Sequence record: OP123707.1 | Length of the DNA: 64,000 bases | Strand: one strand, 5' to 3' | In this document: positions 14,251 to 35,865 of the stretch, in pieces | Position numbering within the stretch: position 1 is the stretch's first letter | How the letters are laid out: the number at the start of each line of letters is the position of its first letter | Made by a program: the position numbers and the translations under genes | The notes under the pieces: model-generated | What the model was told of the DNA's origin: nothing | Database searches by the model: none | Seen by the model: only the letters and a program-made list of their open reading frames with translations

Positions 14251-14267
14251 AAAAACAAAATGCAAAA

Positions 14268-14301
14268 ATAACTCCTACTCCCCGAAAGGAGTAGGAGTTA
14301 T
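14268..14301. terminator. Bidirectional terminator between convergent genes
   Basis: 14-bp stem ATAACTCCTACTCC/GGAGTAGGAGTTAT. Confidence 0.75.
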
Positions 14302-19618: not shown

Positions 19619-19745
19619 CTAAAATGACGCTTAAAAACGCATTTTAGGGAGGGGTTTGGGGTGGGTTCTAGGTCATGGGGTGGGTTCGTAGGTCAAGTTT
19701 AGTCAAGTTGAGAAAGAGTCAAGTTGAAGAAAGTTAAGTCAAGTT
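19619..19745 (+). repeat. Intergenic repeat cluster: inverted repeat, G-tracts, 2x GGGGTGGGTTC(G)TAGGTCA and 4x GTCAAGTT
   Basis: Read directly. GTCAAGTT at 19692, 19702, 19718 and 19738; G-rich repeat units at 19658 and 19677. Confidence 0.8.
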
Positions 19746-19995
19746 TAAAAGATTTAAAAGGGAAAGAAGGTTAGAATTATTTTAATTATTTATCTAGTAA
19801 TAGTTAGCATAGCGAACGATACTCGTAGAGGAGAGTTCTAGCGGAGCTATACCAGTTTACTTATTTTTTATTTACATTTTGATTAAAGATCGTAATAACT
19901 TAAGATTAGAGTTCTTAGAAAGAGAATTCTAATGAGTAAGAGCTTATACTGCTTTTTAAATATTTATTAAACCTTAACAGAGAAAGGAAATTATC

Positions 19996-22638: not shown

Positions 22639-22719
22639 TAAGTTCTTAGTGGATAAGTATATTATATGTACTAAAGAACCCCGTCGAAGACCCCCTGGAA
22701 AAGGTGGAAAGGATTATTT

Positions 22720-22938
22720 TTGCATTTGAGTTATAGAGTACTCCTTAGAGTGAACTATGAGGTACGAGTAGTGAACGGTGAGTGTTGTAGTACGCAGTAC
22801 GAAGACACGATAAAAAAGGGTACTCTTATAACGTTATGGGGTAAAGGTAAGATCCGAGTAAAGCAATTATGGATCTATATTACTGACACGATAAAGGAAT
22901 ACTGTGTGGGATTAATTATAGGTTTAACAGGAGTATAA
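22720..22938 (+). CDS. Possible small protein (72 aa, TTG start)
   Basis: SD AAGGA 6 nt upstream of TTG; fills the intergenic gap. Could instead be regulatory DNA. Confidence 0.3.
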   Translation: MHLSYRVLLRVNYEVRVVNGECCSTQYEDTIKKGTLITLWGKGKIRVKQLWIYITDTIKEYCVGLIIGLTGV

Positions 22939-22942
22939 CGGA

Positions 22943-23713
22943 ATGAGTACAGTGATTCAACAGATCAGCAACACCAATTTATACCACGTACACGGCACCG
23001 TCGTGACAGCCAAAGGAAGACCGAATCGTCAGAACAACATCATGATGACCATTAAGGGTCAAAAACAAGTTCGACTAACTCGTGGACAACGTTGGGTGAA
23101 ACAGCTAGCGAAACTAAGAGAAGGGTTCCCTTTACACTTAGTGGATCAATCTGAACACCTGTGTTTCAAAGAGATCGTGCTTCCTACTTACGAAGATTAC
23201 GTTGTTGATGCACCGTACTTAAGCTGTATGTTGGAATGGGAAGGCTTGCAACTTTACGTATTGCCGGGGTTCTTAGGTAACGCGGTTAGCAGCCAGGGGA
23301 AAGTTTACGAGCTTTACTTAGATAAAGCCAACAAGGAATGGTACTGGGGAGAGATCTACCCTAACCAAAACGAATGTTACGATTTGATCAACTCCATTGA
23401 TGGGGATATGTTGGAGTTAAGCGCGGAAGATCTGATTTACTTACTCAAAGGCGATTACGTCGATGGGAAGGACATCAGTGCTTACTACGAAAAGCGTCAC
23501 ACGGATCTAAAAGCAAAGCTGGCACTCGATGATGGCTGGGTTTCCGTGGATCCTAAGAGTGACTTCGGTCCAGAACATGTGGCTCAACTCCATAACGACA
23601 ATGTGGTGGTTACGTTACGTGACAAACCTAAGACCGTCACAGAAGCGTTCCTACAAGCATACCACGCCAGTGGTTGTGAAACTCAACCTTGGTTAAGTCG
23701 CATTGCAGTTTAA
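22943..23713 (+). CDS. Hypothetical protein with a NUMOD4-like segment
   Basis: LPGFLGNAVSSQGKVY resembles the NUMOD4 pattern IPGY.GYEVS.LGRV. Confidence 0.55.
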   Translation: MSTVIQQISNTNLYHVHGTVVTAKGRPNRQNNIMMTIKGQKQVRLTRGQRWVKQLAKLREGFPLHLVDQSEHLCFKEIVLPTYEDYVVDAPYLSCMLEWEGLQLYVLPGFLGNAVSSQGKVYELYLDKANKEWYWGEIYPNQNECYDLINSIDGDMLELSAEDLIYLLKGDYVDGKDISAYYEKRHTDLKAKLALDDGWVSVDPKSDFGPEHVAQLHNDNVVVTLRDKPKTVTEAFLQAYHASGCETQPWLSRIAV

Positions 23714-23799
23714 GAAGCCCCCAACTACTCTACTTGCTTAATAGCGGTAGAGTAGAGTCTCTTTTTTATTTTTCAATTTTTTATTTAAGGATGAACATC

Positions 23800-24936
23800 A
23801 TGTCCATAGCACTACCATTGAGCAATGATCCAATCGTCACCAAAGCGATGAACCTCATCAGTCGTGATTATTTAAAGCTGCCATTGAGTTCTAACTTAGC
23901 GGAACGCATGGGCTTGAAACCAAATCAATTACGTCATCGTTTTGCTAATGATGGATTAGAGACCCCAAAACACTATTTAGGGAAAGTTAGGGTCGCTTAT
24001 GTAAGGAACCAACTGAAATCCACCAATCGATCCATTCAAGAGATCGCTCAGTCGATGGGGTATGAAGAAGAACATCAATTCCGCAATTGGTACCGAAGCA
24101 ACACCGGGATCACACCAATCAAAGAACGGACCTTAGCACAACTGGAGTCGGAGAACATAGAGACACGCCCAGAGCAAATGGACACCATCATTGATGAACT
24201 CAAAGCCCATATCGATGCCAACTTCACCACCTTAACTCAGGTGGAGTCTTTTATGGATCAATACCTGATGAGCAACGTAGCGATACGCCGTTCATTTAAA
24301 CGAACTCATAAACTGTACCCACGCGAGTATTTGATCAAAACTCAGTGTGAGTATGTTGCGAGGCGCATTCGTAAGGATGGTTGGTTTAAACAAGAAATCT
24401 TGAAACACGTGAAACATGGACAGATTACCGGGTTCAATCGCATGTTCAAGAAATACTACAACGTGAGTGTGTACGACTACGGTAAAACAAACACCTTGGG
24501 ATTCGCAGTGACCGTCAACGGAACCAAACGTTGGTTGACGCAAACTTTAGTGGACCAGATTTTAGAACACCTGGCGGACGAAGTCTTTACGGATCATCAA
24601 TCGATCACTGACATTCGAAAGTTTTACGGTATTCATTATGAGAACTGGACTAAGTTGTTTGAAAGTACCGTCGGTATGAATGCACGACACACTTATCGTG
24701 GGATCGAGTATGAAGCAGCACTTCACTTGATCCAACACACGAGTTGGAACATCGAACGCATTATCGACACCGTGACGTCTGGTAAGCGTTCCAACTTTAA
24801 CGCCCGTTTTAAAGAGTACTTCGGATTGACGCCAATCGAAGCCAGACGCTACCCAGAACGTGTGATGCGTTTACAGGACACTGAGCAATTGGTGAAGTAC
24901 ATGAAAGTTGGCTTACAAAACTTAGAAATTAATTAA
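23800..24936 (+). CDS. Protein of three tandem AraC/XylS-type DNA-binding domains (378 aa)
   Basis: Three ~100-aa units ending FRNWYRSNTGITP, FNRMFKKYYNVSV and FNARFKEYFGLTP. SD AAGGA before ATG 23800. Confidence 0.85.
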   Translation: MSIALPLSNDPIVTKAMNLISRDYLKLPLSSNLAERMGLKPNQLRHRFANDGLETPKHYLGKVRVAYVRNQLKSTNRSIQEIAQSMGYEEEHQFRNWYRSNTGITPIKERTLAQLESENIETRPEQMDTIIDELKAHIDANFTTLTQVESFMDQYLMSNVAIRRSFKRTHKLYPREYLIKTQCEYVARRIRKDGWFKQEILKHVKHGQITGFNRMFKKYYNVSVYDYGKTNTLGFAVTVNGTKRWLTQTLVDQILEHLADEVFTDHQSITDIRKFYGIHYENWTKLFESTVGMNARHTYRGIEYEAALHLIQHTSWNIERIIDTVTSGKRSNFNARFKEYFGLTPIEARRYPERVMRLQDTEQLVKYMKVGLQNLEIN

Positions 24937-24949
24937 AGGCTTAAGAACA

Positions 24950-25666
24950 ATGCAACAAGATTTTAAACAATCACTTTTAGAAAGCACCGTCCAGTGGGTC
25001 CACAACAACTACCATCGACCAATTAAGGTAGGGGACATCCACCACCAAATGGGGTTGTCTGCTCCTCTGGTCACATATTTGTTTAAAGCACGTTTCAAGA
25101 TCACCCCAGGAACGTACCTCCGTAACTACCGAATGATGAAGGCTCACGAACACATTCGCCAAGGGGTTAAACCTACGGTGGCGTGTGAACGTACTGGGTA
25201 CACCAGTTACCACGCGTTTTGTCGAGTGTACAAAGTCCATTACGGGTTAACCCCATCGGAACATTCTCGACGTTTCCGTAACATGGAAGTCCAGACGGAA
25301 AGCTACGCTAACAGCATCATGAACAAGGAGTTCCCGGAAAGCCTTCGTGCTCGCATCATTGATTACGTGGTTGAGAACATCAAGCACAACCAAAACTTAC
25401 GTAAGTTGGAGAAACACTTCAATCTTCGGTTTGGGAGTTTGGGTCCTATGTTCGAGTATTTTTATAACTTGACATATTACGATTGGCGCAAGAAGATGCG
25501 CATGGAGAAGGTCAATGAGTTAATCCGTAACGACCCTCACATGGATCTTAAATCACTCCCAGCGACGTTAGGGATTTGCAGTTATCACTATCTAAACACG
25601 TTGTACCAAGCACACTACGGTATGACGATTGGTCAGTACGCTTACAAACAAAAGAGAATGGTCTAA
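24950..25666 (+). CDS. Protein of two tandem AraC-type DNA-binding domains (238 aa)
   Basis: Units ...YLRNYRM...TGYTSYHAFCRVYKVHYGLTPSE and ...KMRMEK...LGICSYHYLNTLYQAHYGMT. Confidence 0.85.
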   Translation: MQQDFKQSLLESTVQWVHNNYHRPIKVGDIHHQMGLSAPLVTYLFKARFKITPGTYLRNYRMMKAHEHIRQGVKPTVACERTGYTSYHAFCRVYKVHYGLTPSEHSRRFRNMEVQTESYANSIMNKEFPESLRARIIDYVVENIKHNQNLRKLEKHFNLRFGSLGPMFEYFYNLTYYDWRKKMRMEKVNELIRNDPHMDLKSLPATLGICSYHYLNTLYQAHYGMTIGQYAYKQKRMV

Positions 25667-26370
25667 TGAAAAACATGGAAGTTTTTAAGTTCATCGAACA
25701 AGCGATCGAAGCAAATTATCGTGATCTAAAGGCAAGTGGGAAAGTCTGTCAGGCCACCGCAATGAGTCGTAACCAGATTAATGCGGTGTTAGCACGTCTA
25801 GGAAAGCCGACCCTGAAACAACTGATCGTAAATAAGCGCGTGATCGTTGCTAAGGAGCTCCTAGACAAAGGAACGGTGAAAGCCAAAGTCTTACACACCA
25901 AAGTAGGATACGGTACGTACAAAGGGCTTAGAGAGGCGTTTGTGCAAGCTTACGGAGTTACCCCAAGTTTTTATGAGATGAGTCCTAAGACTAAGCTCCA
26001 GAATAAAAACGAAAAGCAAACTCCTCCGGAGTTCACCCAACCGTTTCAGTATGAAGTCAATAAGTACATTCTGAAACATTTCGTGGATAAGGGGATTACT
26101 GTTCATGATGTGGCGAAGGAATTCAACACCACCAACGAGATGATTGAGAAAGTGTGTCAACACTATTACCATCGATCATTTGCGGACCGGGTATTACACC
26201 TTCGTTTGAACCGTGCCGCGGGTCAATTACACGGAACCCGCAAAGACCCAAAAACCATCGCTTCGAATGTTGGGTTTCTAACCTACCATTTCTTTGTAGT
26301 GAAATTCACGGAGATGTTTACGGTAGGACCTAAACGTTACCGGACCTTAGCTCGACTGAATGCGATTTAA
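25666..26370 (+). CDS. Protein of two tandem AraC-type DNA-binding domains (234 aa)
   Basis: TAATG overlap with the previous gene. Units ...VGYGTYKGLREAFVQAYGVTP and ...LRLNRA...VGFLTYHFFVVKFTEMFTVGPKRYR. Confidence 0.85.
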   Translation: MKNMEVFKFIEQAIEANYRDLKASGKVCQATAMSRNQINAVLARLGKPTLKQLIVNKRVIVAKELLDKGTVKAKVLHTKVGYGTYKGLREAFVQAYGVTPSFYEMSPKTKLQNKNEKQTPPEFTQPFQYEVNKYILKHFVDKGITVHDVAKEFNTTNEMIEKVCQHYYHRSFADRVLHLRLNRAAGQLHGTRKDPKTIASNVGFLTYHFFVVKFTEMFTVGPKRYRTLARLNAI

Positions 26371-26389
26371 TACTGAAAGGTAATGTTAT

Positions 26390-26907
26390 GTGAACAGAAA
26401 GTATTTTAGTGAAACCTCACTGGAGTATCCGAACAAATCAGGTGTATACCGCGAGATCTGTCAGTAGTGTGGATCTTCAAGTACTTCTGTTCACAATCTC
26501 ATCCTTTCACGGGGTGATACCAGATCAGTAGGTATAAAGCGCACGAATAATGTTCGGGGATGGCAATGGTTTGATTTTCATCCTTTTGTTTCCGGCTTCG
26601 ATGAGTAGCCGTTCCCGGACACCAAATGTTAATTCATGTATGTTGACGCATTGGTATCATGAGTTACATTAGACCCTTCTTCATTTAGCCGAGTGGATGA
26701 ACGGGTTGCTGTGTGAACAGCCGGCTAAGCTCTTTAAGACGAATAAGGTTCCTCCAGCCTTGCCCATCGTTTCCCTCATTAGAGAGTTTAGTTCGGGTGT
26801 TTCTTCCAGTAGGGAAGGCCAACCACTGCTTTCTTGGTGACATCTTTAGTTCTTAGGAACAAGATAGTTTCGCAGCAGCCGTTCTCCTAGGAGAACGGTA
26901 CTTTTTT
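26390..26907 (+). ncRNA. Candidate large structured non-coding RNA (~520 nt), family not recognised
   Basis: No credible ORF in a gene-dense genome. More than 12 helices found by eye, a terminal helix GTGAACAGAAAGTA/TACTTCTGTTCAC, a GNRA hairpin and a pseudoknot. Starts at the G of TATG and ends in a terminator. Confidence 0.7.
26878..26907 (+). terminator. Intrinsic terminator closing the candidate ncRNA
   Basis: GCCGTTCTC-ctag-GAGAACGGT then ACTTTTTT. Confidence 0.85.
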
Positions 26908-27051
26908 GCTTTTTCAATATTTTCATAAAAAAGTTCCAGAGCTCCTACAAGGCTCTCTAAGCTTCTTTAGCACTTTTATTATGTCTTATAAACTATAACT
27001 GCATTGCACATCTTCTAGGTGCCATACAAACGTTTTAACGATGGAAAGTTT

Positions 27052-30289: not shown

Positions 30290-32362
30290 ATGATTCAACC
30301 AATGTTGTCTCCGTTTGTCGACCCTGATTATCATTCTGATAGAAACATCGTCAAGCATTATCATAATCAGATGGTGACTTACTTGCAAAAGCGTTTCGGC
30401 GTTACCGAGAAACAAGCTACTCAGGTCGTTAAGAAAAACTTCCGCCCTAATAAAGGTGAATACCAAGACCGTAAATTCAAAGTCTTAGAGAAAAACAAAT
30501 ACGGCGACCGTGAACTTAAAGTCATCACAGCAACACAATTCTTCAATACGGTGCATTCTAACAACTACCACTTGAGTCCATCACTCGTGGGTTATAAGAA
30601 CTCGGAAGAAGAACAATCCGTAAACTCCATCGGGACGGAACGATTCCTAAAACTCCGTAAGCTTTACAAAGGGAAACGTCAAGAAGCAAAAGGTACGGGT
30701 GATAAGTGGGCAGAGAAAACCTTTGACGTAATTCAGAACGCTTTGAAGATTTTCAACAACGCCCAGTCCGGTGCAATGTCGTCCAACGGCACACCTATTG
30801 TAAACAAGTCTGGTCACACGACGTTGACTTCGACCTGTCGCGGTCTGACGTCCACCGCGAACATCTGTAACGAGAAGTTCCTAGCGGGTAACCGACTCTA
30901 TAACACATTTGAGAACACACTCCAGAACATCATAGCGACCGTTCAATATACCGACTTGGACCGCATGCAAGATGTGATGGACAAACTCGAGATGAAACAC
31001 GCCACGGTAGATCAAGTGATGAACATGATTCGTCACTCTACTGGTCGTTACTGGCGTAATGCAGCACGTATGAAGACCATTGAGGAAATGATCAATGTCT
31101 TCAAGCCAGTTGAGTTAACCGCCTTGTTGTGTGTGCTTGACTTGGAAGGCTTGCGCGTTACGAACAAAAACGTGTTGTATCAATTCTTGGATGACTTCTC
31201 GAAAGTCCCAGAAGTCCCAGAGGGAGCCAAAGAAGAAGATTACCCTGCACCGGATACGGGTGACCGTTATACGTTGTGTGTGTCTAAGATTGTTGGTAAA
31301 CCGAGCAAGGTCCAAATCAACCATCTGAACGCGTGGCATTTAGAATGTGAGATGAAATGGAAAGACTTCATCGAAGTATTCTTGAAACAAGAAATTCCAC
31401 CATCAGGTGTTTACAACATCAAAGACATGATTCGCGAAGTAGTATTGACGTCGGACACCGACTCATCAATCTACACCGTGGATACCGTAGTGGACCAATA
31501 CACCAAAGACCGTGCGACTTCACTTCGTGCTAACGGGGTATTGACTTACTTCATTCGTATGATTGCGGTTCACCAACACGCACAGTTCTCTGAGAACATG
31601 AACGTAGCAAAACGTTTCCGTTACCGTCTCAACATGAAGAACGAATATCTATTCGGGGCTTATGTAACCACCACGATGTCTAAACACTACTACGCGACTC
31701 AGCTCATGGTAGAGGGTGTGATGAACAAAGAAGTGGAAATGGAAATCAAAGGAGTGCACTTGCGCTCAGCGAAAATTGCGGCCCAAATCAAATCCTTTGC
31801 TCACTCATTGATGCGGGAAGTGTTGGATGCCATCCATGAACACCGTCAGTTAGATGCCGCGGATATCTTGTTCCGTGCGGCTGAACTAGAGCGAGAAATC
31901 ATTGGTGACTTGGAAGCGGGTAAATGGATGTGGTTGACGAAGTCGACGATTAAAGATGGGGAAATGTACGCTAAGCCAGAATCTTCTGTTTTCCAATACC
32001 ACGTTTTGTGGGAACGCATCTTTTCTAAGAAATATGGACACGCTCCAGAATTGCCGTACACCGCAATCAAAGTAAACGCAAAAACATTGAACCGAGCTTC
32101 GATCGCGGAATGGTTAGAAGGATTAGAAGGGGATGTGAAAAAAGGTGCGGAATCGCATTTATCAGACTCCACGAAACTGACCACTATCTATGTACCAGAA
32201 GAATGTTTGGGTGCAGAAGGGATCCCTAAAGAAATCATTCAGGCGGCAGACATTCGTTCTATCATCAAACAGAACTTAAAATGTGTGTATGCGGTATTGG
32301 AGTCTCTAGGTCTCTTTATTGTGAATGAGAAAATCACTCGCATCATCAGCGATGAACATTAA
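30290..32362 (+). CDS. Family B DNA polymerase, polymerase-domain half (phiKZ gp50-like)
   Basis: Motif B KIFNNAQSG, motif C TSDTDS, then KHYY and EIKGV. No motif A or exonuclease motifs seen. Confidence 0.85.
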   Translation: MIQPMLSPFVDPDYHSDRNIVKHYHNQMVTYLQKRFGVTEKQATQVVKKNFRPNKGEYQDRKFKVLEKNKYGDRELKVITATQFFNTVHSNNYHLSPSLVGYKNSEEEQSVNSIGTERFLKLRKLYKGKRQEAKGTGDKWAEKTFDVIQNALKIFNNAQSGAMSSNGTPIVNKSGHTTLTSTCRGLTSTANICNEKFLAGNRLYNTFENTLQNIIATVQYTDLDRMQDVMDKLEMKHATVDQVMNMIRHSTGRYWRNAARMKTIEEMINVFKPVELTALLCVLDLEGLRVTNKNVLYQFLDDFSKVPEVPEGAKEEDYPAPDTGDRYTLCVSKIVGKPSKVQINHLNAWHLECEMKWKDFIEVFLKQEIPPSGVYNIKDMIREVVLTSDTDSSIYTVDTVVDQYTKDRATSLRANGVLTYFIRMIAVHQHAQFSENMNVAKRFRYRLNMKNEYLFGAYVTTTMSKHYYATQLMVEGVMNKEVEMEIKGVHLRSAKIAAQIKSFAHSLMREVLDAIHEHRQLDAADILFRAAELEREIIGDLEAGKWMWLTKSTIKDGEMYAKPESSVFQYHVLWERIFSKKYGHAPELPYTAIKVNAKTLNRASIAEWLEGLEGDVKKGAESHLSDSTKLTTIYVPEECLGAEGIPKEIIQAADIRSIIKQNLKCVYAVLESLGLFIVNEKITRIISDEH

Positions 32363-33732: not shown

Positions 33733-35865
33733 ATGATCTCAGGCAAAAACGACTGGGAGAAAGTAATCGGTAATAATGAATCGAAAGATTCACAAGAGAA
33801 CAATACTAGTCGTTCTCAAGAAACTCCGATTCCTGAAACTCCTGTTCAAACTCAACCAATTTTAAATCAACCAACCACTACTCAAACTGCACAACAAGGA
33901 GCAGCTAAAATGTCTCAAGCAAACAAAAACCAATCTCTACTAGACTTCGCTTCAGTTCTAGGTATGAACTCAATGATGTCTGGCGGTCGCTCAGTTCCTG
34001 TTGTGAACGAAGTAATCAAAGCACTGAACGACTTCAAAGAAGAGAAAGGTAAATCATCTCTTGCACCTGCACTGCAAGCTATCATTCCTCAAGACATCAT
34101 CTCGATGGATGCTAACTTGTCTCCAGTGCTACCGGGTATCATCCTAGCTCGCCGTGTTGGTTCTTCAATGATCATCGCTCCTATCATGTTCTCTAACCGT
34201 GAACTAGCGATCCAACTTGAAGAGATTCACACTAACGGTGTAATGGGTCAAAACACCCCTAACAAAGTGCAAATCAAACAAGCACCTAACCGTTACATGA
34301 ATGGTGAAGTTGTTCGTAACATCATCGACTCTATGAAACTGCGTCACGCAGCAGATGGCATCAACGATGTTCAACTAATCACTTCTCGCGTAATCGACCT
34401 GGAAAACTACCAAACGCCAGAAAACAAAGAAGCGGGTCTACCTCAGCTACTTACTGGTGTTATCCTTGACGAATGGGAACGTGGTATGAAAACCACACTA
34501 GCGAAAACTATGGTGAAAGCCCAAGTTGAGCTTAAAACTCCATTCATCGACTCTAAAGGTCAAATCGACAAAAACGCTTACGGTCCAACGAAGTGTGCAA
34601 CAGCACGTATCGAGTCTGTGAAAGCGCAAGCGGGTGGCGTACTGTCTATCGATGGTGTTCCTTGTGGTGCGAACATGACTGTTCAACTACAAACAGCACC
34701 TAAAGAAGGTCAGCACGTAAACAACGATGCGGCTCGTGGTATTGTAACTACTTACTCTACTGTACAGCTAATCGGCGTTCCATTCGCAGTGTACACAGCA
34801 GAACTTGCACGTCGTCCACAACAGGTCTTTAACCCAATGCTGCACGCAGCTGGTGATGCATACCCTCACGGTTACCACCCACTACAAGCAGTAGTTGTAA
34901 TGAACACTTCACGTGCTCAAGCGCAAATGGGTAACAACTCTGGTATCGCATCATGGTTGATGGGTCTGTACGCGAACATGACTGTGAACCACAACCACCT
35001 ATTCACTGAGCCTCTACGCATGGCGAACATCGGTGCGCGTGGTAACTTGTCTCACATCGAGCGTCGTATCGATGACATGATCATGGGTGCTTTACCTAAG
35101 CGTGATGACAAGACTAAGATCACAGAAGCGCGTCTGAAAGACATGGACTTCACTTCTAGCTGGATTCGTCGTAACATCGCACCACACGCGTCTTACGCAA
35201 TCGACCTAACTGAGTTTGGTAACGAAGCAGCACTACACAACTTCCTACTGAACCTTGCAGGTAAAACAGCAAGCAGCGCAGAGAACAAGCACACTATCAT
35301 CAAGTACTTGGACTCTATCACTGACGGTGAAGCGACTAAGCGTATCACGGAGAACCGTGCAGCTGGTAAAGGCTGGACTCAAGACAAACCAATCTTGTGC
35401 CCATCTTCTATCATCCTGCCAGTTGGTACATTCAAGCACAATGGCGTATTGCACTCACTAGAAGAAGTGGATGAAATCTTCCTAAGCCGTCTGTGCCCAA
35501 CTGACTCTACACCAATGATTCAGTACCTAGGTGCTATCTACGGTGACAACGGTCAAACTCCAGAAGCAGTACGTCGTTACAAGATGACTACTATGCTGGC
35601 GACATTGATCAACGATGATGTGAACATCACTGGTATTGCACGTCGTCACTACGTGTCTCCAGAGTTCGCGGAATTCCTTGGCCTATGTCTAGACAAACTA
35701 GGTAGCCTAAACGCATCTGGTACTATGGGTACATTTACTTCGAACGTAGCTATCTACGCTCCATCTGTCGAGTTCGCTGTACAAGCGGCAGCAGGTGCAT
35801 CTGGTGCATACATGTCTACACATGGTGCTCTAGTGGGTAACCCATCTGGTATCACTTACGCATAA
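33733..35865 (+). CDS. chmA: Chimallin, major phage nuclear shell protein (phiKZ gp54-like)
   Basis: Size (651-710 aa), position immediately before the nvRNAP beta' gene, extreme high-expression codon bias, its own promoter and terminator. Confidence 0.8.
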   Translation: MISGKNDWEKVIGNNESKDSQENNTSRSQETPIPETPVQTQPILNQPTTTQTAQQGAAKMSQANKNQSLLDFASVLGMNSMMSGGRSVPVVNEVIKALNDFKEEKGKSSLAPALQAIIPQDIISMDANLSPVLPGIILARRVGSSMIIAPIMFSNRELAIQLEEIHTNGVMGQNTPNKVQIKQAPNRYMNGEVVRNIIDSMKLRHAADGINDVQLITSRVIDLENYQTPENKEAGLPQLLTGVILDEWERGMKTTLAKTMVKAQVELKTPFIDSKGQIDKNAYGPTKCATARIESVKAQAGGVLSIDGVPCGANMTVQLQTAPKEGQHVNNDAARGIVTTYSTVQLIGVPFAVYTAELARRPQQVFNPMLHAAGDAYPHGYHPLQAVVVMNTSRAQAQMGNNSGIASWLMGLYANMTVNHNHLFTEPLRMANIGARGNLSHIERRIDDMIMGALPKRDDKTKITEARLKDMDFTSSWIRRNIAPHASYAIDLTEFGNEAALHNFLLNLAGKTASSAENKHTIIKYLDSITDGEATKRITENRAAGKGWTQDKPILCPSSIILPVGTFKHNGVLHSLEEVDEIFLSRLCPTDSTPMIQYLGAIYGDNGQTPEAVRRYKMTTMLATLINDDVNITGIARRHYVSPEFAEFLGLCLDKLGSLNASGTMGTFTSNVAIYAPSVEFAVQAAAGASGAYMSTHGALVGNPSGITYA

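What the first reader, a model, noticed from the sequence alone, without database searches (positions are those of the whole stretch)
23800..26370. Operon of three proteins made only of AraC DNA-binding domains (3+2+2 = 7 domains, no sensor domains)
Seen in sequence: each ~100-aa unit carries the AraC pattern (first HTH, YL...R...A..LL, then IA..hGh....F...Fk...GhTP), joined by short linkers. The last two genes are translationally coupled by a TAATG overlap. Established: cellular AraC/XylS regulators usually have one DNA-binding domain plus a ligand/dimerisation domain, or are single-domain (MarA/SoxS). Concatenated, divergent, sensor-less arrays in a lytic jumbo phage are unusual. Inference: long-site binders that reprogram the host (decoys or dominant negatives for host AraC-family regulators), phage genome organisers, or RNA-binding partners of the adjacent ncRNA.
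Basis: partly seen in the sequence, partly recalled or inferred. Interest (0 to 1): 0.75.

Follow-up and report, generated by a model that had tools for sequence, protein, structure and literature searches.

The report
Phage operon of tandem AraC DNA-binding proteins
A nucleus-forming giant Vibrio phage carries three back-to-back genes whose proteins are nothing but 3, 2 and 2 copies of the AraC-type DNA-binding domain. The set is conserved across this whole phage subfamily and is uncharacterised; these are most likely ligand-independent gene regulators whose target DNA is still unknown.

Summary
The window is Vibrio phage phiKT1028 ('Ariel'), an experimentally nucleus-forming chimallivirus. 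Genes 23800-24936, 24950-25666 and 25666-26370 (+ strand) encode 378, 238 and 234 aa proteins. They consist of 3, 2 and 2 AraC/XylS DNA-binding domains and no sensor domain. All seven units hit Pfam HTH_18 when scanned alone. An AlphaFold model of the first protein (pLDDT 89) shows three 7-helix domains that match MarA, SoxS and AraC structures.

The trio has 1:1:1 orthologues in all nine Gorgonvirinae phages and in metagenomic relatives. A more distant chimallivirus has only the 3-domain gene. The proteins evolve faster than their neighbours, and their DNA-reading helices are no better conserved than the rest.

Two-domain sensor-less AraC proteins also occur in ordinary bacterial loci. The three-domain form was seen only in this phage clade.

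Function is inferred, not shown. My best reading is single-chain, ligand-independent DNA-binding regulators in which tandem domains replace dimerisation. I lean towards lineage-specific sites on phage DNA; host takeover is the main rival.

The operon lies between two conserved non-coding elements, one of them a structured RNA candidate with covariation.

I class this as a new variant of a known kind, of moderate interest.

The parts
23800..24936 (+). P1: 378-aa protein made of three AraC-type DNA-binding domains. D1 is aa 11-117 (nt 23830-24150), D2 aa 127-231 (24178-24492), D3 aa 248-350 (24541-24849). A beta-hairpin lies at aa 236-245 (24505-24534) and a C-terminal helix at aa 362-372 (24883-24915).
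   Evidence: Pfam HTH_18 gives 3 stretches, E 8e-32, and each unit scores alone. The AF2 model has pLDDT 89.1 and Foldseek matches AraC-family DNA-binding domains. PHROG 7620 E 3e-99. Orthologues occur in 9 phages.
24950..25666 (+). P2: 238-aa protein made of two AraC-type DNA-binding domains (D1 nt 24950-25291, D2 nt 25295-25663).
   Evidence: Pfam HTH_18 gives 2 stretches, E 1e-21. The closest solved sequences are SoxS, RamA and MarA, E about 1e-7. Orthologues occur in 9 phages. The P2 family is collinear with P1 D1-D2 by hhalign, E 4e-20.
25666..26370 (+). P3: 234-aa protein made of two AraC-type DNA-binding domains (D1 nt 25666-26001, D2 nt 26002-26367).
   Evidence: Pfam HTH_18 gives 2 stretches, E 3e-20. 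The closest solved sequence is AraT-C (6swi), E 1e-8. Orthologues occur in 9 phages. P3 is a paralogue of P2 by hhalign, E 3e-25.
25664..25668 (+). TAATG stop/start overlap of P2 and P3 (translational coupling).
   Evidence: Read directly from the sequence. Overlapping or abutting gene ends are also found in Aphrodite1, phiKT1019 and L014.
23725..23775 (+). Hairpin (9-bp stem 23725-23733 / 23747-23755, 13-nt loop) followed by a T-run, between the upstream gene and P1. It looks like a terminator or attenuator.
   Evidence: Read from the sequence. A hairpin plus T-run of different sequence sits at the same place in pTD1, VP4B, phiKT1019, Aphrodite1, L014, L015 and L016, but not in L007.
22943..23713 (+). 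Upstream gene up1 (256 aa, phrog_24322, function unknown). It is probably the first gene of the same transcription unit.
   Evidence: PHROG hit. It is always directly upstream of P1 and is 42-69% identical across lineages.
22875..22883 (+). CTATATTAC: a site of the chimallivirus promoter type, 925 nt upstream of the P1 ATG and ahead of up1.
   Evidence: The motif is enriched in intergenic DNA genome-wide. It lies 907-1019 nt upstream of P1 in 6 of the 7 lineages with enough upstream flank; phiKT1019 has CTATATAAC at the homologous position. It matches the published phiKZ, 201phi2-1, EL and OBP promoter consensus.
26371..26910 (+). Conserved structured non-coding element directly 3' of P3. A conserved 17-bp helix pairs 26717-26734 with 26781-26799. 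An intrinsic-terminator hairpin lies at 26878-26899, followed by a T-run.
   Evidence: The + strand folds with z = -5.3. The region is homologous in 7 lineages. RNAalifold predicts 30 pairs, 8 with compensatory changes. The terminator was found. Rfam has no match.

Best explanation
P1, P2 and P3 are phage-encoded, sequence-reading double-stranded-DNA-binding regulators of the AraC/XylS fold that work without a ligand. Each ~105-aa domain carries two helix-turn-helix heads and should cover about two turns of DNA. Joining two or three domains in one chain does the job that the N-terminal dimerisation/sensor domain does in cellular AraC proteins. It lets one molecule hold two or three adjacent ~20-bp sites, so activity is set by when the proteins are made rather than by a small molecule. 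The three genes are made together: a 13-nt gap, then a TAATG overlap. They lie in a unit that appears to start at a chimallivirus-type promoter ahead of the upstream gene and to end at the terminator after the downstream non-coding element. I commit to lineage-specific sites on the phage's own DNA as the more likely target, meaning timing of phage transcription inside the phage nucleus. The third domain of P1, less basic and conserved in its first two helices, may serve as a protein-contact module.

Shown: the fold, the architecture, the conservation and the gene arrangement.

Inferred: DNA binding, the multi-site binding mode, the temporal class, the target and the role of D3.
For: Fold and architecture are established.

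Charge fits DNA binding. P1, P2 and P3 have pI 9.5-9.9 and six of the seven units are basic. D1 and D2 of P1 are basic in 9 of 9 orthologues.

The genes are kept. 1:1:1 orthologues are retained in all 9 Gorgonvirinae phages, whose hosts are V. parahaemolyticus, V. alginolyticus, V. harveyi and Photobacterium, and in metagenomic contigs L014 and L015. The 3-domain gene alone is kept in the same synteny in a distant chimallivirus, L007.

P2 and P3 are paralogues, collinear with D1-D2 of P1.

The DNA-reading helices h3 and h6 vary as much as the rest of the protein (23-35% against 27-32% pairwise identity). The proteins diverge faster than their neighbours. This holds even between phiKT1028 and phiKT1019, which infect the same strain (P1 30% identical). 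That fits targets that co-evolve within each phage better than it fits conserved host promoters.

Host DNA is no longer visible at 60 min in Ariel or Eric infection (PMC10587174).

Bacterial two-domain sensor-less AraC proteins sit beside sugar operons, where ordinary dimeric AraC regulators usually sit (L008). This supports the 'single-chain dimer' logic.

Against: There is no experimental datum on binding, localisation or expression for any member.

AraC-family activators are known to act through the host RNA polymerase alpha-CTD or sigma-70 region 4 (established knowledge). By analogy with phiKZ-like phages the phage's own RNA polymerases are taken to lack both (own knowledge; not checked here).

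Proteins made in the cytoplasm need selective import to reach DNA inside the phage nucleus. Nothing shows that these proteins are imported.

I found no repeated candidate operator in the phage genome beyond promoters and terminators.

A conserved hairpin plus T-run lies between the promoter-type site and P1, so the temporal class is unresolved.

D3 of P1 is basic in only 4 of 9 orthologues.
Confidence: 0.42

Rival explanations
1. Host-takeover regulators. Made early, the proteins stay in the cytoplasm and bind the host chromosome. They act like constitutive MarA/SoxS-type activators (or repressors) of host RNA polymerase, re-programming host genes before the chromosome is destroyed.
For: The closest solved relatives of P2 D1 are SoxS, RamA and MarA, which are sensor-less monomers that recruit host RNA polymerase. 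AraC-family activation works through host polymerase parts (established knowledge). Another chimallivirus, RAY, makes an XRE-type regulator that decorates the host chromosome (bioRxiv 10.1101/2023.02.24.529968). Staying in the cytoplasm is the default for a protein with no import feature. The unit is headed by a promoter-type site that is the early class in phiKZ.
Against: Reading helices are not conserved between phages of the same or closely related hosts. No unit reaches equivalog level for any host regulator (best 47 bits against a cut-off of 174). SoxS/MarA helix-3 contact residues are replaced. Host DNA is gone by 60 min.
Confidence: 0.25
2. Architectural proteins. These are low-specificity, multi-headed DNA binders that coat, bend or bridge phage DNA (nucleoid-associated-like) inside the phage nucleus or at the early injected-genome stage.
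For: The proteins have several basic DNA-binding domains per chain and three co-produced chains. Reading residues drift freely. No repeated operator was found.
Against: Three distinct paralogues with seven distinct domains are each kept 1:1 across the subfamily. That argues for non-redundant, specific roles. AraC-type domains are known as sequence-specific readers (established knowledge).
Confidence: 0.12
3. Partners of the adjacent non-coding RNA. The proteins bind the conserved structured RNA encoded directly downstream and form an RNP.
For: The AraC gene(s) and the downstream element are adjacent in every lineage seen, including L007 with one AraC gene and the PhuZ-less Tidunavirus phages. 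There is no terminator between P3 and the element.
Against: To my knowledge AraC-type domains have no documented RNA-binding role. The RNA blocks are much better conserved than the proteins' reading helices. Adjacency is equally explained by shared transcription.
Confidence: 0.06
4. Decoys or dominant negatives. By occupying the sites of host AraC-family regulators, or titrating their partners, they block host responses (for example defence or stress regulons).
For: They have DNA-binding domains but no activation-controlling sensor domain. They are phage-encoded.
Against: The problems of the host-takeover rival apply here too. In addition, no close similarity to any particular host regulator was found, and divergence between phages sharing a host is rapid.
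Confidence: 0.05

Closest known systems
MarA / SoxS / RamA (single-domain, sensor-less AraC-family activators of enterobacteria)
   Same: They have no ligand or dimerisation domain, share the 7-helix double-HTH fold, and their activity is set by abundance. They are the best solved sequence matches of P2 D1 (E about 1e-7) and structural matches of P1.
   Different: They have one domain per chain against two or three here. NCBIfam equivalog scores are far below cut-off (47 against 174 bits). Helix-3 base-contact residues are replaced. The proteins here are phage-encoded, in a phage that by analogy with phiKZ-like phages does not depend on host RNA polymerase (own knowledge).
Classical two-domain AraC/XylS regulators (AraC, RhaS/RhaR, XylS, ToxT, MelR)
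   Same: They share the same C-terminal DNA-binding domain (Pfam HTH_18 / HTH_AraC). They probably also read two or more adjacent ~17-20-bp sites.
   Different: Cellular proteins reach multi-site binding by dimerising through an N-terminal sensor domain. Here the domains are joined covalently and there is no sensor.
PHROG 7620 'transcriptional regulator' / RefSeq 'transcriptional regulator' genes of Gorgonvirinae (e.g. Aphrodite1 gp053-055, pTD1, VP4B)
   Same: This is the same family: all three proteins hit it (E 3e-99, 2e-45, 9e-32) and are syntenic orthologues.
   Different: Nothing differs in kind. This is one more member of an uncharacterised family whose tandem architecture had not been spelled out in the literature I could search.
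Bacterial sensor-less two-domain AraC proteins (metagenomic P0027, P0034, P0037, P0117)
   Same: They share the 2 x DNA-binding-domain architecture and ~235-255 aa length of P2 and P3.
   Different: They are only 19-25% identical and not orthologous. They sit in ordinary chromosomal loci: a rhamnose operon; PTS, GH3 and EF-Ts genes; LexA and VanW genes. None has three domains.
Erwinia chimallivirus RAY gp094 (XRE-type regulator on the host chromosome)
   Same: It is an HTH regulator encoded by a nucleus-forming phage and acts outside the phage nucleus. This is a precedent for the host-directed rival.
   Different: It has a different fold (XRE/cro-type), a single domain, and is not homologous.

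Membership tests
AraC/XylS family (Pfam HTH_18 PF12833 / HTH_AraC PF00165) | A ~100-aa DNA-binding domain with two helix-turn-helix motifs joined by a long helix (7 helices) | tested here: met
   All seven units hit HTH_18 alone (E 1e-16 to 5e-5). Five of seven are above the gathering score on their own, and all three whole proteins are above it. AF2 gives three 7-helix domains, and Foldseek TM is 0.67-0.77 to AraC, MarA, SoxS and AdpA.
AraC/XylS family (typical cellular members) | A second, non-DNA-binding domain for ligand sensing and/or dimerisation (typical, not universal) | tested here: not met
   The whole length of each protein is covered by DNA-binding domains. The only extras are a 10-aa hairpin and a ~28-aa tail in P1.
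AraC/XylS family | Sequence-specific dsDNA binding and control of transcription | not testable with these tools
   There is only indirect support: basic pI, conserved fold, and purifying retention across the subfamily.
MarA/SoxS/Rob/RamA subfamily | Score at equivalog level against the curated models | tested here: not met
   The best results are P2 D1 against SoxS (47.4 bits, cut-off 174), RamA (42.4 against 180) and MarA (30.8 against 250).
MarA/SoxS/Rob/RamA subfamily | Conserved helix-3 residues that read the marbox (W, Q, R of the SKW.LQR motif; own knowledge of the MarA-DNA structure) | tested here: not met
   In the alignment of P2 D1 with SoxS, SKWYLQRMF aligns with SAPLVTYLF.
Lactose-operon activator / Msm-operon regulator (GenBank product names of P2 and P3) | A sugar-responsive N-terminal domain plus one AraC domain; equivalog-level similarity | tested here: not met
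   There is no N-terminal sensor domain. No NCBIfam family reaches its cut-off. The names look like best-hit transfers.
PHROG 7620 (phage 'transcriptional regulator') | A significant full-length match to the family profile | tested here: met
   E values are 2.6e-99 (P1), 1.6e-45 (P2) and 8.8e-32 (P3).
Chimalliviridae genome context | The phage encodes chimallin and forms a nucleus | tested here: met
   Window 33733-35865 hits the phrog_4795 nuclear shell protein, E 4e-191. Nucleus formation by phiKT1028 was shown experimentally in PMC10587174.

The most novel reading that the evidence does not exclude
The trio are the first dedicated promoter-selectivity or timing factors for the sigma-less multisubunit RNA polymerases of nucleus-forming phages. 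They would be imported into the phage nucleus and read lineage-specific multi-part sites. P1's conserved, less basic third domain would dock on the phage polymerase. They might work together with the conserved structured RNA that is always encoded directly downstream.
Probability: 0.15. Interest if true: 0.8.

Novelty: new variant of a known kind. Interest (0 to 1): 0.45.

Why it matters
How nucleus-forming jumbo phages order their early, middle and late transcription is poorly understood. To my knowledge, no transcription factor has been tied to their unusual RNA polymerases.

This is a conserved, co-translated set of seven AraC-type DNA-reading domains. It sits in the block that also holds the tubulin PhuZ (where present), the DNA polymerase and the nuclear shell gene. 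That makes it a concrete, testable candidate for such control, or alternatively for early host takeover.

The architecture is also a natural example of replacing ligand-controlled dimerisation by covalent domain tandems. That is of interest for understanding and engineering AraC-family regulators.

If the proteins turn out to be ordinary host-directed MarA-like factors, the finding is a useful annotation correction and little more.

Tried and rejected
- AF2 on the single P1 sequence gave an unusable model (pLDDT 44). It was replaced by the 9-sequence run.
- The search for homologous proteins found only two close relatives because of its word index. The exhaustive HMMER search was needed.
- I looked for operator-like repeats around the operon and for tandem repeats in the window. 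Only short two-copy families turned up, and no tandem array lies near the operon.
- The TTTTTCAAT(A/T)TTTT motif follows both flanking terminators but is not significantly enriched (7 found against 3.2 expected). I dropped it as a promoter candidate.
- TATATGT was tested as a second promoter class. It has nine sites with no consistent context, so this stays undecided.
- Rfam found nothing for either non-coding element. ARAGORN found nothing.
- blastn 'distant' cannot see the relatives of the downstream element.
- A pattern scan for the downstream element's conserved helix in IMG/VR returned four Gorgonvirinae genomes plus one false positive inside a tape-measure gene of an unrelated high-GC phage.
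- I considered the nearly invariant upstream non-coding block as the operator of these proteins. I rejected this as unlikely because the proteins' reading helices are not conserved.
- The PHROG profile suggested that P2 and P3 align with D2-D3 of P1. Profile-profile comparison of orthologue alignments instead places them on D1-D2.
Full report
**Identity of the window.** Megablast places the region at 100% identity in Vibrio phage phiKT1028 (OP123707.1, 238,838 bp, Gorgonvirinae, Tidunavirus). The window is the last 64 kb of that record. phiKT1028 ('Ariel') was shown experimentally to build a chimallin-bounded phage nucleus. It lacks PhuZ, and no extranuclear host DNA is visible at 60 min after infection (PMC10587174). 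In the window, chimallin is 33733-35865 (phrog_4795, E 4e-191) and the divergent family B DNA polymerase is 30290-32362.

**The observation.** Three + strand genes lie at 23800-24936 (P1, 378 aa), 24950-25666 (P2, 238 aa) and 25666-26370 (P3, 234 aa). P1 and P2 are 13 nt apart. P2 and P3 share the A of TAATG at 25664-25668.
- Pfam HTH_18 finds 3, 2 and 2 stretches.
- Cut into seven units and scanned alone, every unit hits HTH_18 (E 1e-16 to 5e-5). Two units fall below the gathering score when alone.
- An AlphaFold2 model of P1 from one sequence was useless. With nine orthologues it reached pLDDT 89.1 and pTM 0.63. It shows three 7-helix domains, a short beta-hairpin between domains 2 and 3, and a C-terminal helix.
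- Foldseek matches each domain-sized piece to AraC-family DNA-binding domains, including the MarA-DNA, SoxS and AdpA-DNA structures.
- Nothing else of domain size is present.
- The units are only 10-22% identical to each other.
- Profile-profile comparison shows P2 and P3 are paralogues (E 3e-25), both collinear with domains 1-2 of P1.

**Distribution.**
- tblastn finds one orthologue of each of P1, P2 and P3 in all nine distinct Gorgonvirinae phages of the collection: phiKT1028, pTD1, VP4B, phiKT1019, Aphrodite1, USC-1, phage 2 and phage 5 TSL-2019, and PDCC-1. Outside them there are only single-domain hits.
- The order 3-2-2, with overlapping or abutting gene ends, is the same in the annotated loci of pTD1, phiKT1019 and Aphrodite1, in four IMG/VR records of the same genomes, and in the metagenomic contig L014. 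The short contig L015 holds the 3-domain gene, the first 2-domain gene and the start of a third gene.
- An exhaustive HMMER search of 1.84 billion representative proteins found only six full-length relatives at E < 1e-30, plus one at 9e-19.
- That last protein lies on a 71-kb chimallivirus contig (L007) in the same synteny: AraC gene, gap, tubulin, then DNA polymerase and chimallin further on. That contig has no P2 or P3. The 3-domain gene therefore looks like the older core.
- The same search also surfaced 2-domain sensor-less AraC proteins that are not orthologues (19-25% identity). They sit in ordinary bacterial loci: one beside a rhamnose operon, one beside PTS, GH3 and EF-Ts genes, one beside LexA.
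- The two-domain architecture is thus rare but not phage-specific. The three-domain one was seen only in this phage lineage.
- A fourth, separate AraC-like gene exists outside the window (record 82807-83775, phrog_27247).

**What is known.** RefSeq names the orthologues 'transcriptional regulator' and PHROGs clusters them as family 7620. Iyer et al. 2021 mention AraC-like HTH activators in group 1 jumbo phages in one sentence. A 2026 review of jumbo phages does not mention them. I found no paper on their architecture or function. The GenBank names of P2 and P3 ('lactose operon transcription activator', 'msm operon regulatory protein') are not supported. No NCBIfam model comes near its cut-off, and the sensor domain those names imply is absent.

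**Evolutionary behaviour.** Against pTD1, VP4B, phiKT1019, Aphrodite1, L014 and L007, P1 is 48, 50, 30, 27, 32 and 21% identical, and P3 is about 30% identical to every relative that has it (L007 has none). The upstream gene is 69-42% identical and the downstream genes mostly 35-85%.

Within the P1 family the two recognition helices of each domain are no better conserved than the scaffold (23-35% against 27-32% pairwise identity). The best conserved parts are helices 1-2 of domain 3 (39-50%).

Domains 1 and 2 are basic in all nine orthologues; domain 3 is basic in only four. phiKT1028 and phiKT1019 infect the same strain, yet their P1 proteins are 30% identical.

**Transcription context.**
- A k-mer screen of intergenic DNA over the whole genome, read in pieces, recovers one strong motif: an AT-rich block followed by CCTATATTAC and GGTG. 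It matches the published promoter consensus of phiKZ, 201phi2-1, EL and OBP.
- In phiKZ the AT-rich class is the early, virion-polymerase class (plus my own knowledge of Ceyssens et al. 2014).
- A CTATATTAC site lies 907-1019 nt upstream of the P1 start, ahead of the conserved upstream gene (22943-23713). It was found in six of the seven lineages with enough flank; phiKT1019 has CTATATAAC at the homologous position.
- Between that gene and P1 every Gorgonvirinae lineage has a hairpin plus T-run of different sequence.
- The trio is therefore expressed either by read-through of an early-type unit or from an unrecognised promoter. The temporal class is not settled.
- There is no terminator between P3 and the downstream element. 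A clear one lies at 26878-26899.

**Flanking non-coding elements.**

*Downstream.* The region 26371-26910 has no ORF and folds far better than shuffles on the + strand (z = -5.3, against -2.8 for the other strand). It is homologous in seven lineages, with sequence blocks better conserved than the flanking proteins. RNAalifold predicts a 17-bp helix with compensatory changes at five of its pairs, plus a covarying terminator stem. Rfam has no match. The element is retained in the PhuZ-less Tidunavirus phages, so it is not simply a PhuZ leader.

*Upstream.* About 150 nt at 22657-22830 are almost invariant across lineages. They do not fold better than chance. A 43-nt piece recurs exactly in another long intergenic gap of the genome. 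I cannot explain this block. It is invariant while the AraC reading helices are not, so it is an unlikely operator for them.

**How it most likely works.**

*Shown.* The AraC-type double-HTH fold occurs seven times. There is no sensor domain. The proteins are co-produced and retained across the subfamily under fast sequence change.

*Established for the family.* Each such domain reads two successive major grooves over roughly 17-20 bp. Cellular members reach two-site binding by dimerising through a ligand-controlled N-terminal domain.

*Inferred.* The covalent tandems are single-chain dimers and trimers that bind two or three adjacent sites constitutively, so that expression timing is the switch.

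For the target I lean to the phage's own DNA for three reasons:
- the reading residues drift between phages that share hosts;
- the host chromosome disappears;
- the genes sit in the conserved replication and nucleus block.

The main counter-arguments are real. AraC-type activation normally needs host polymerase parts, which the phage enzymes are taken to lack by analogy with phiKZ-like phages (own knowledge; not checked here). Access to phage DNA requires import into the nucleus. Another chimallivirus is known to send an HTH regulator to the host chromosome.

My estimates are:
- phage-directed regulators, about 0.4;
- host-directed takeover, about 0.25;
- architectural binding, about 0.12;
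- RNA partnership and the decoy role, about 0.05 each.

**Verdict.** The feature is real and was correctly read. It belongs to a known superfamily and to an already clustered but uncharacterised phage family. The tandem, sensor-less architecture, above all the triple one, and its fixed place between two conserved non-coding elements make it a new variant of a known kind. Interest is moderate until binding targets and localisation are measured.

Noticed in passing
window 26371-26910 (+): A conserved structured non-coding element lies directly after the third AraC gene. Fold z = -5.3. It is homologous in 7 lineages and has a 17-bp helix with compensatory changes. It ends in a terminator and has no Rfam family. 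It is present wherever the AraC gene(s) are, and is kept in phages that lost PhuZ.
   Followed up: partly
window 22657-22830; second partial copy at L010 32250-32292 (record coordinates 32250-32292): A nearly invariant ~150-nt non-coding block lies upstream of the promoter-type site that heads the unit. It is conserved far beyond the flanking proteins, is not thermodynamically unusual, and has no Rfam hit. A 43-nt piece is repeated exactly in another ~300-bp intergenic gap. Unexplained.
   Followed up: partly
L011 33807-34775 (record 82807-83775), outside the window: A fourth AraC-like gene (322 aa, annotated hypothetical, phrog_27247) sits just upstream of RNase H. It has one clear N-terminal HTH_18 domain (E 1e-9) plus ~200 aa of unclear nature. 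Its likely pTD1 counterpart was the best BFVD structural match of the P1 model.
   Followed up: partly
window 18349, 22875, 43259, 48999 (+), and about a dozen more sites in the rest of the genome: A genome-wide intergenic motif: an AT-rich block, then CCTATATTAC, then GGTG. It matches the published chimallivirus (phiKZ, 201phi2-1, EL, OBP) promoter consensus, so these are candidate early promoters of this phage.
   Followed up: partly
window 14260-14300; also record 5381, 37914, 59361, 72216 and 120298: A family of near-identical bidirectional terminator hairpins (ATAACTCCTACC, a short loop, GGTAGGAGTTAT) lies between convergent genes.
   Followed up: no
window 24950-26370; L002 6872-7576 (pTD1): Annotation issues. 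The GenBank product names of P2 and P3 (lactose-operon activator, msm-operon regulator) are unsupported best-hit transfers, and P1 is labelled hypothetical. In pTD1 the third gene is annotated as 197 aa, but the homology to P3 runs over 234 aa, so its start is probably called too late.
   Followed up: partly
L008 24-743; L017 6001-6708; L019 617-1384: Bacterial proteins made only of two AraC DNA-binding domains sit in ordinary chromosomal loci: next to a rhamnose utilisation operon; next to PTS, GH3 and LytTR two-component genes; and next to a single-domain AraC gene and LexA. They may be single-chain equivalents of dimeric sugar regulators.
   Followed up: partly
protein P0011 (418 aa, metagenomic): This protein has four consecutive matches to only the second half of the AraC domain. 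It may be an array of half-domains.
   Followed up: no
window 19657-19750: Short tandem repeats (periods of 16-20 nt, 2-3 copies) lie in the intergenic gap after the HNH endonuclease gene.
   Followed up: no
window 22943-23713: The upstream gene (256 aa, phrog_24322, no Pfam domain) is the best conserved gene of this neighbourhood (42-69% identity). It always directly precedes the 3-domain AraC gene, even in the distant contig L007, where only 22 nt separate them. It may work with the AraC proteins.
   Followed up: no
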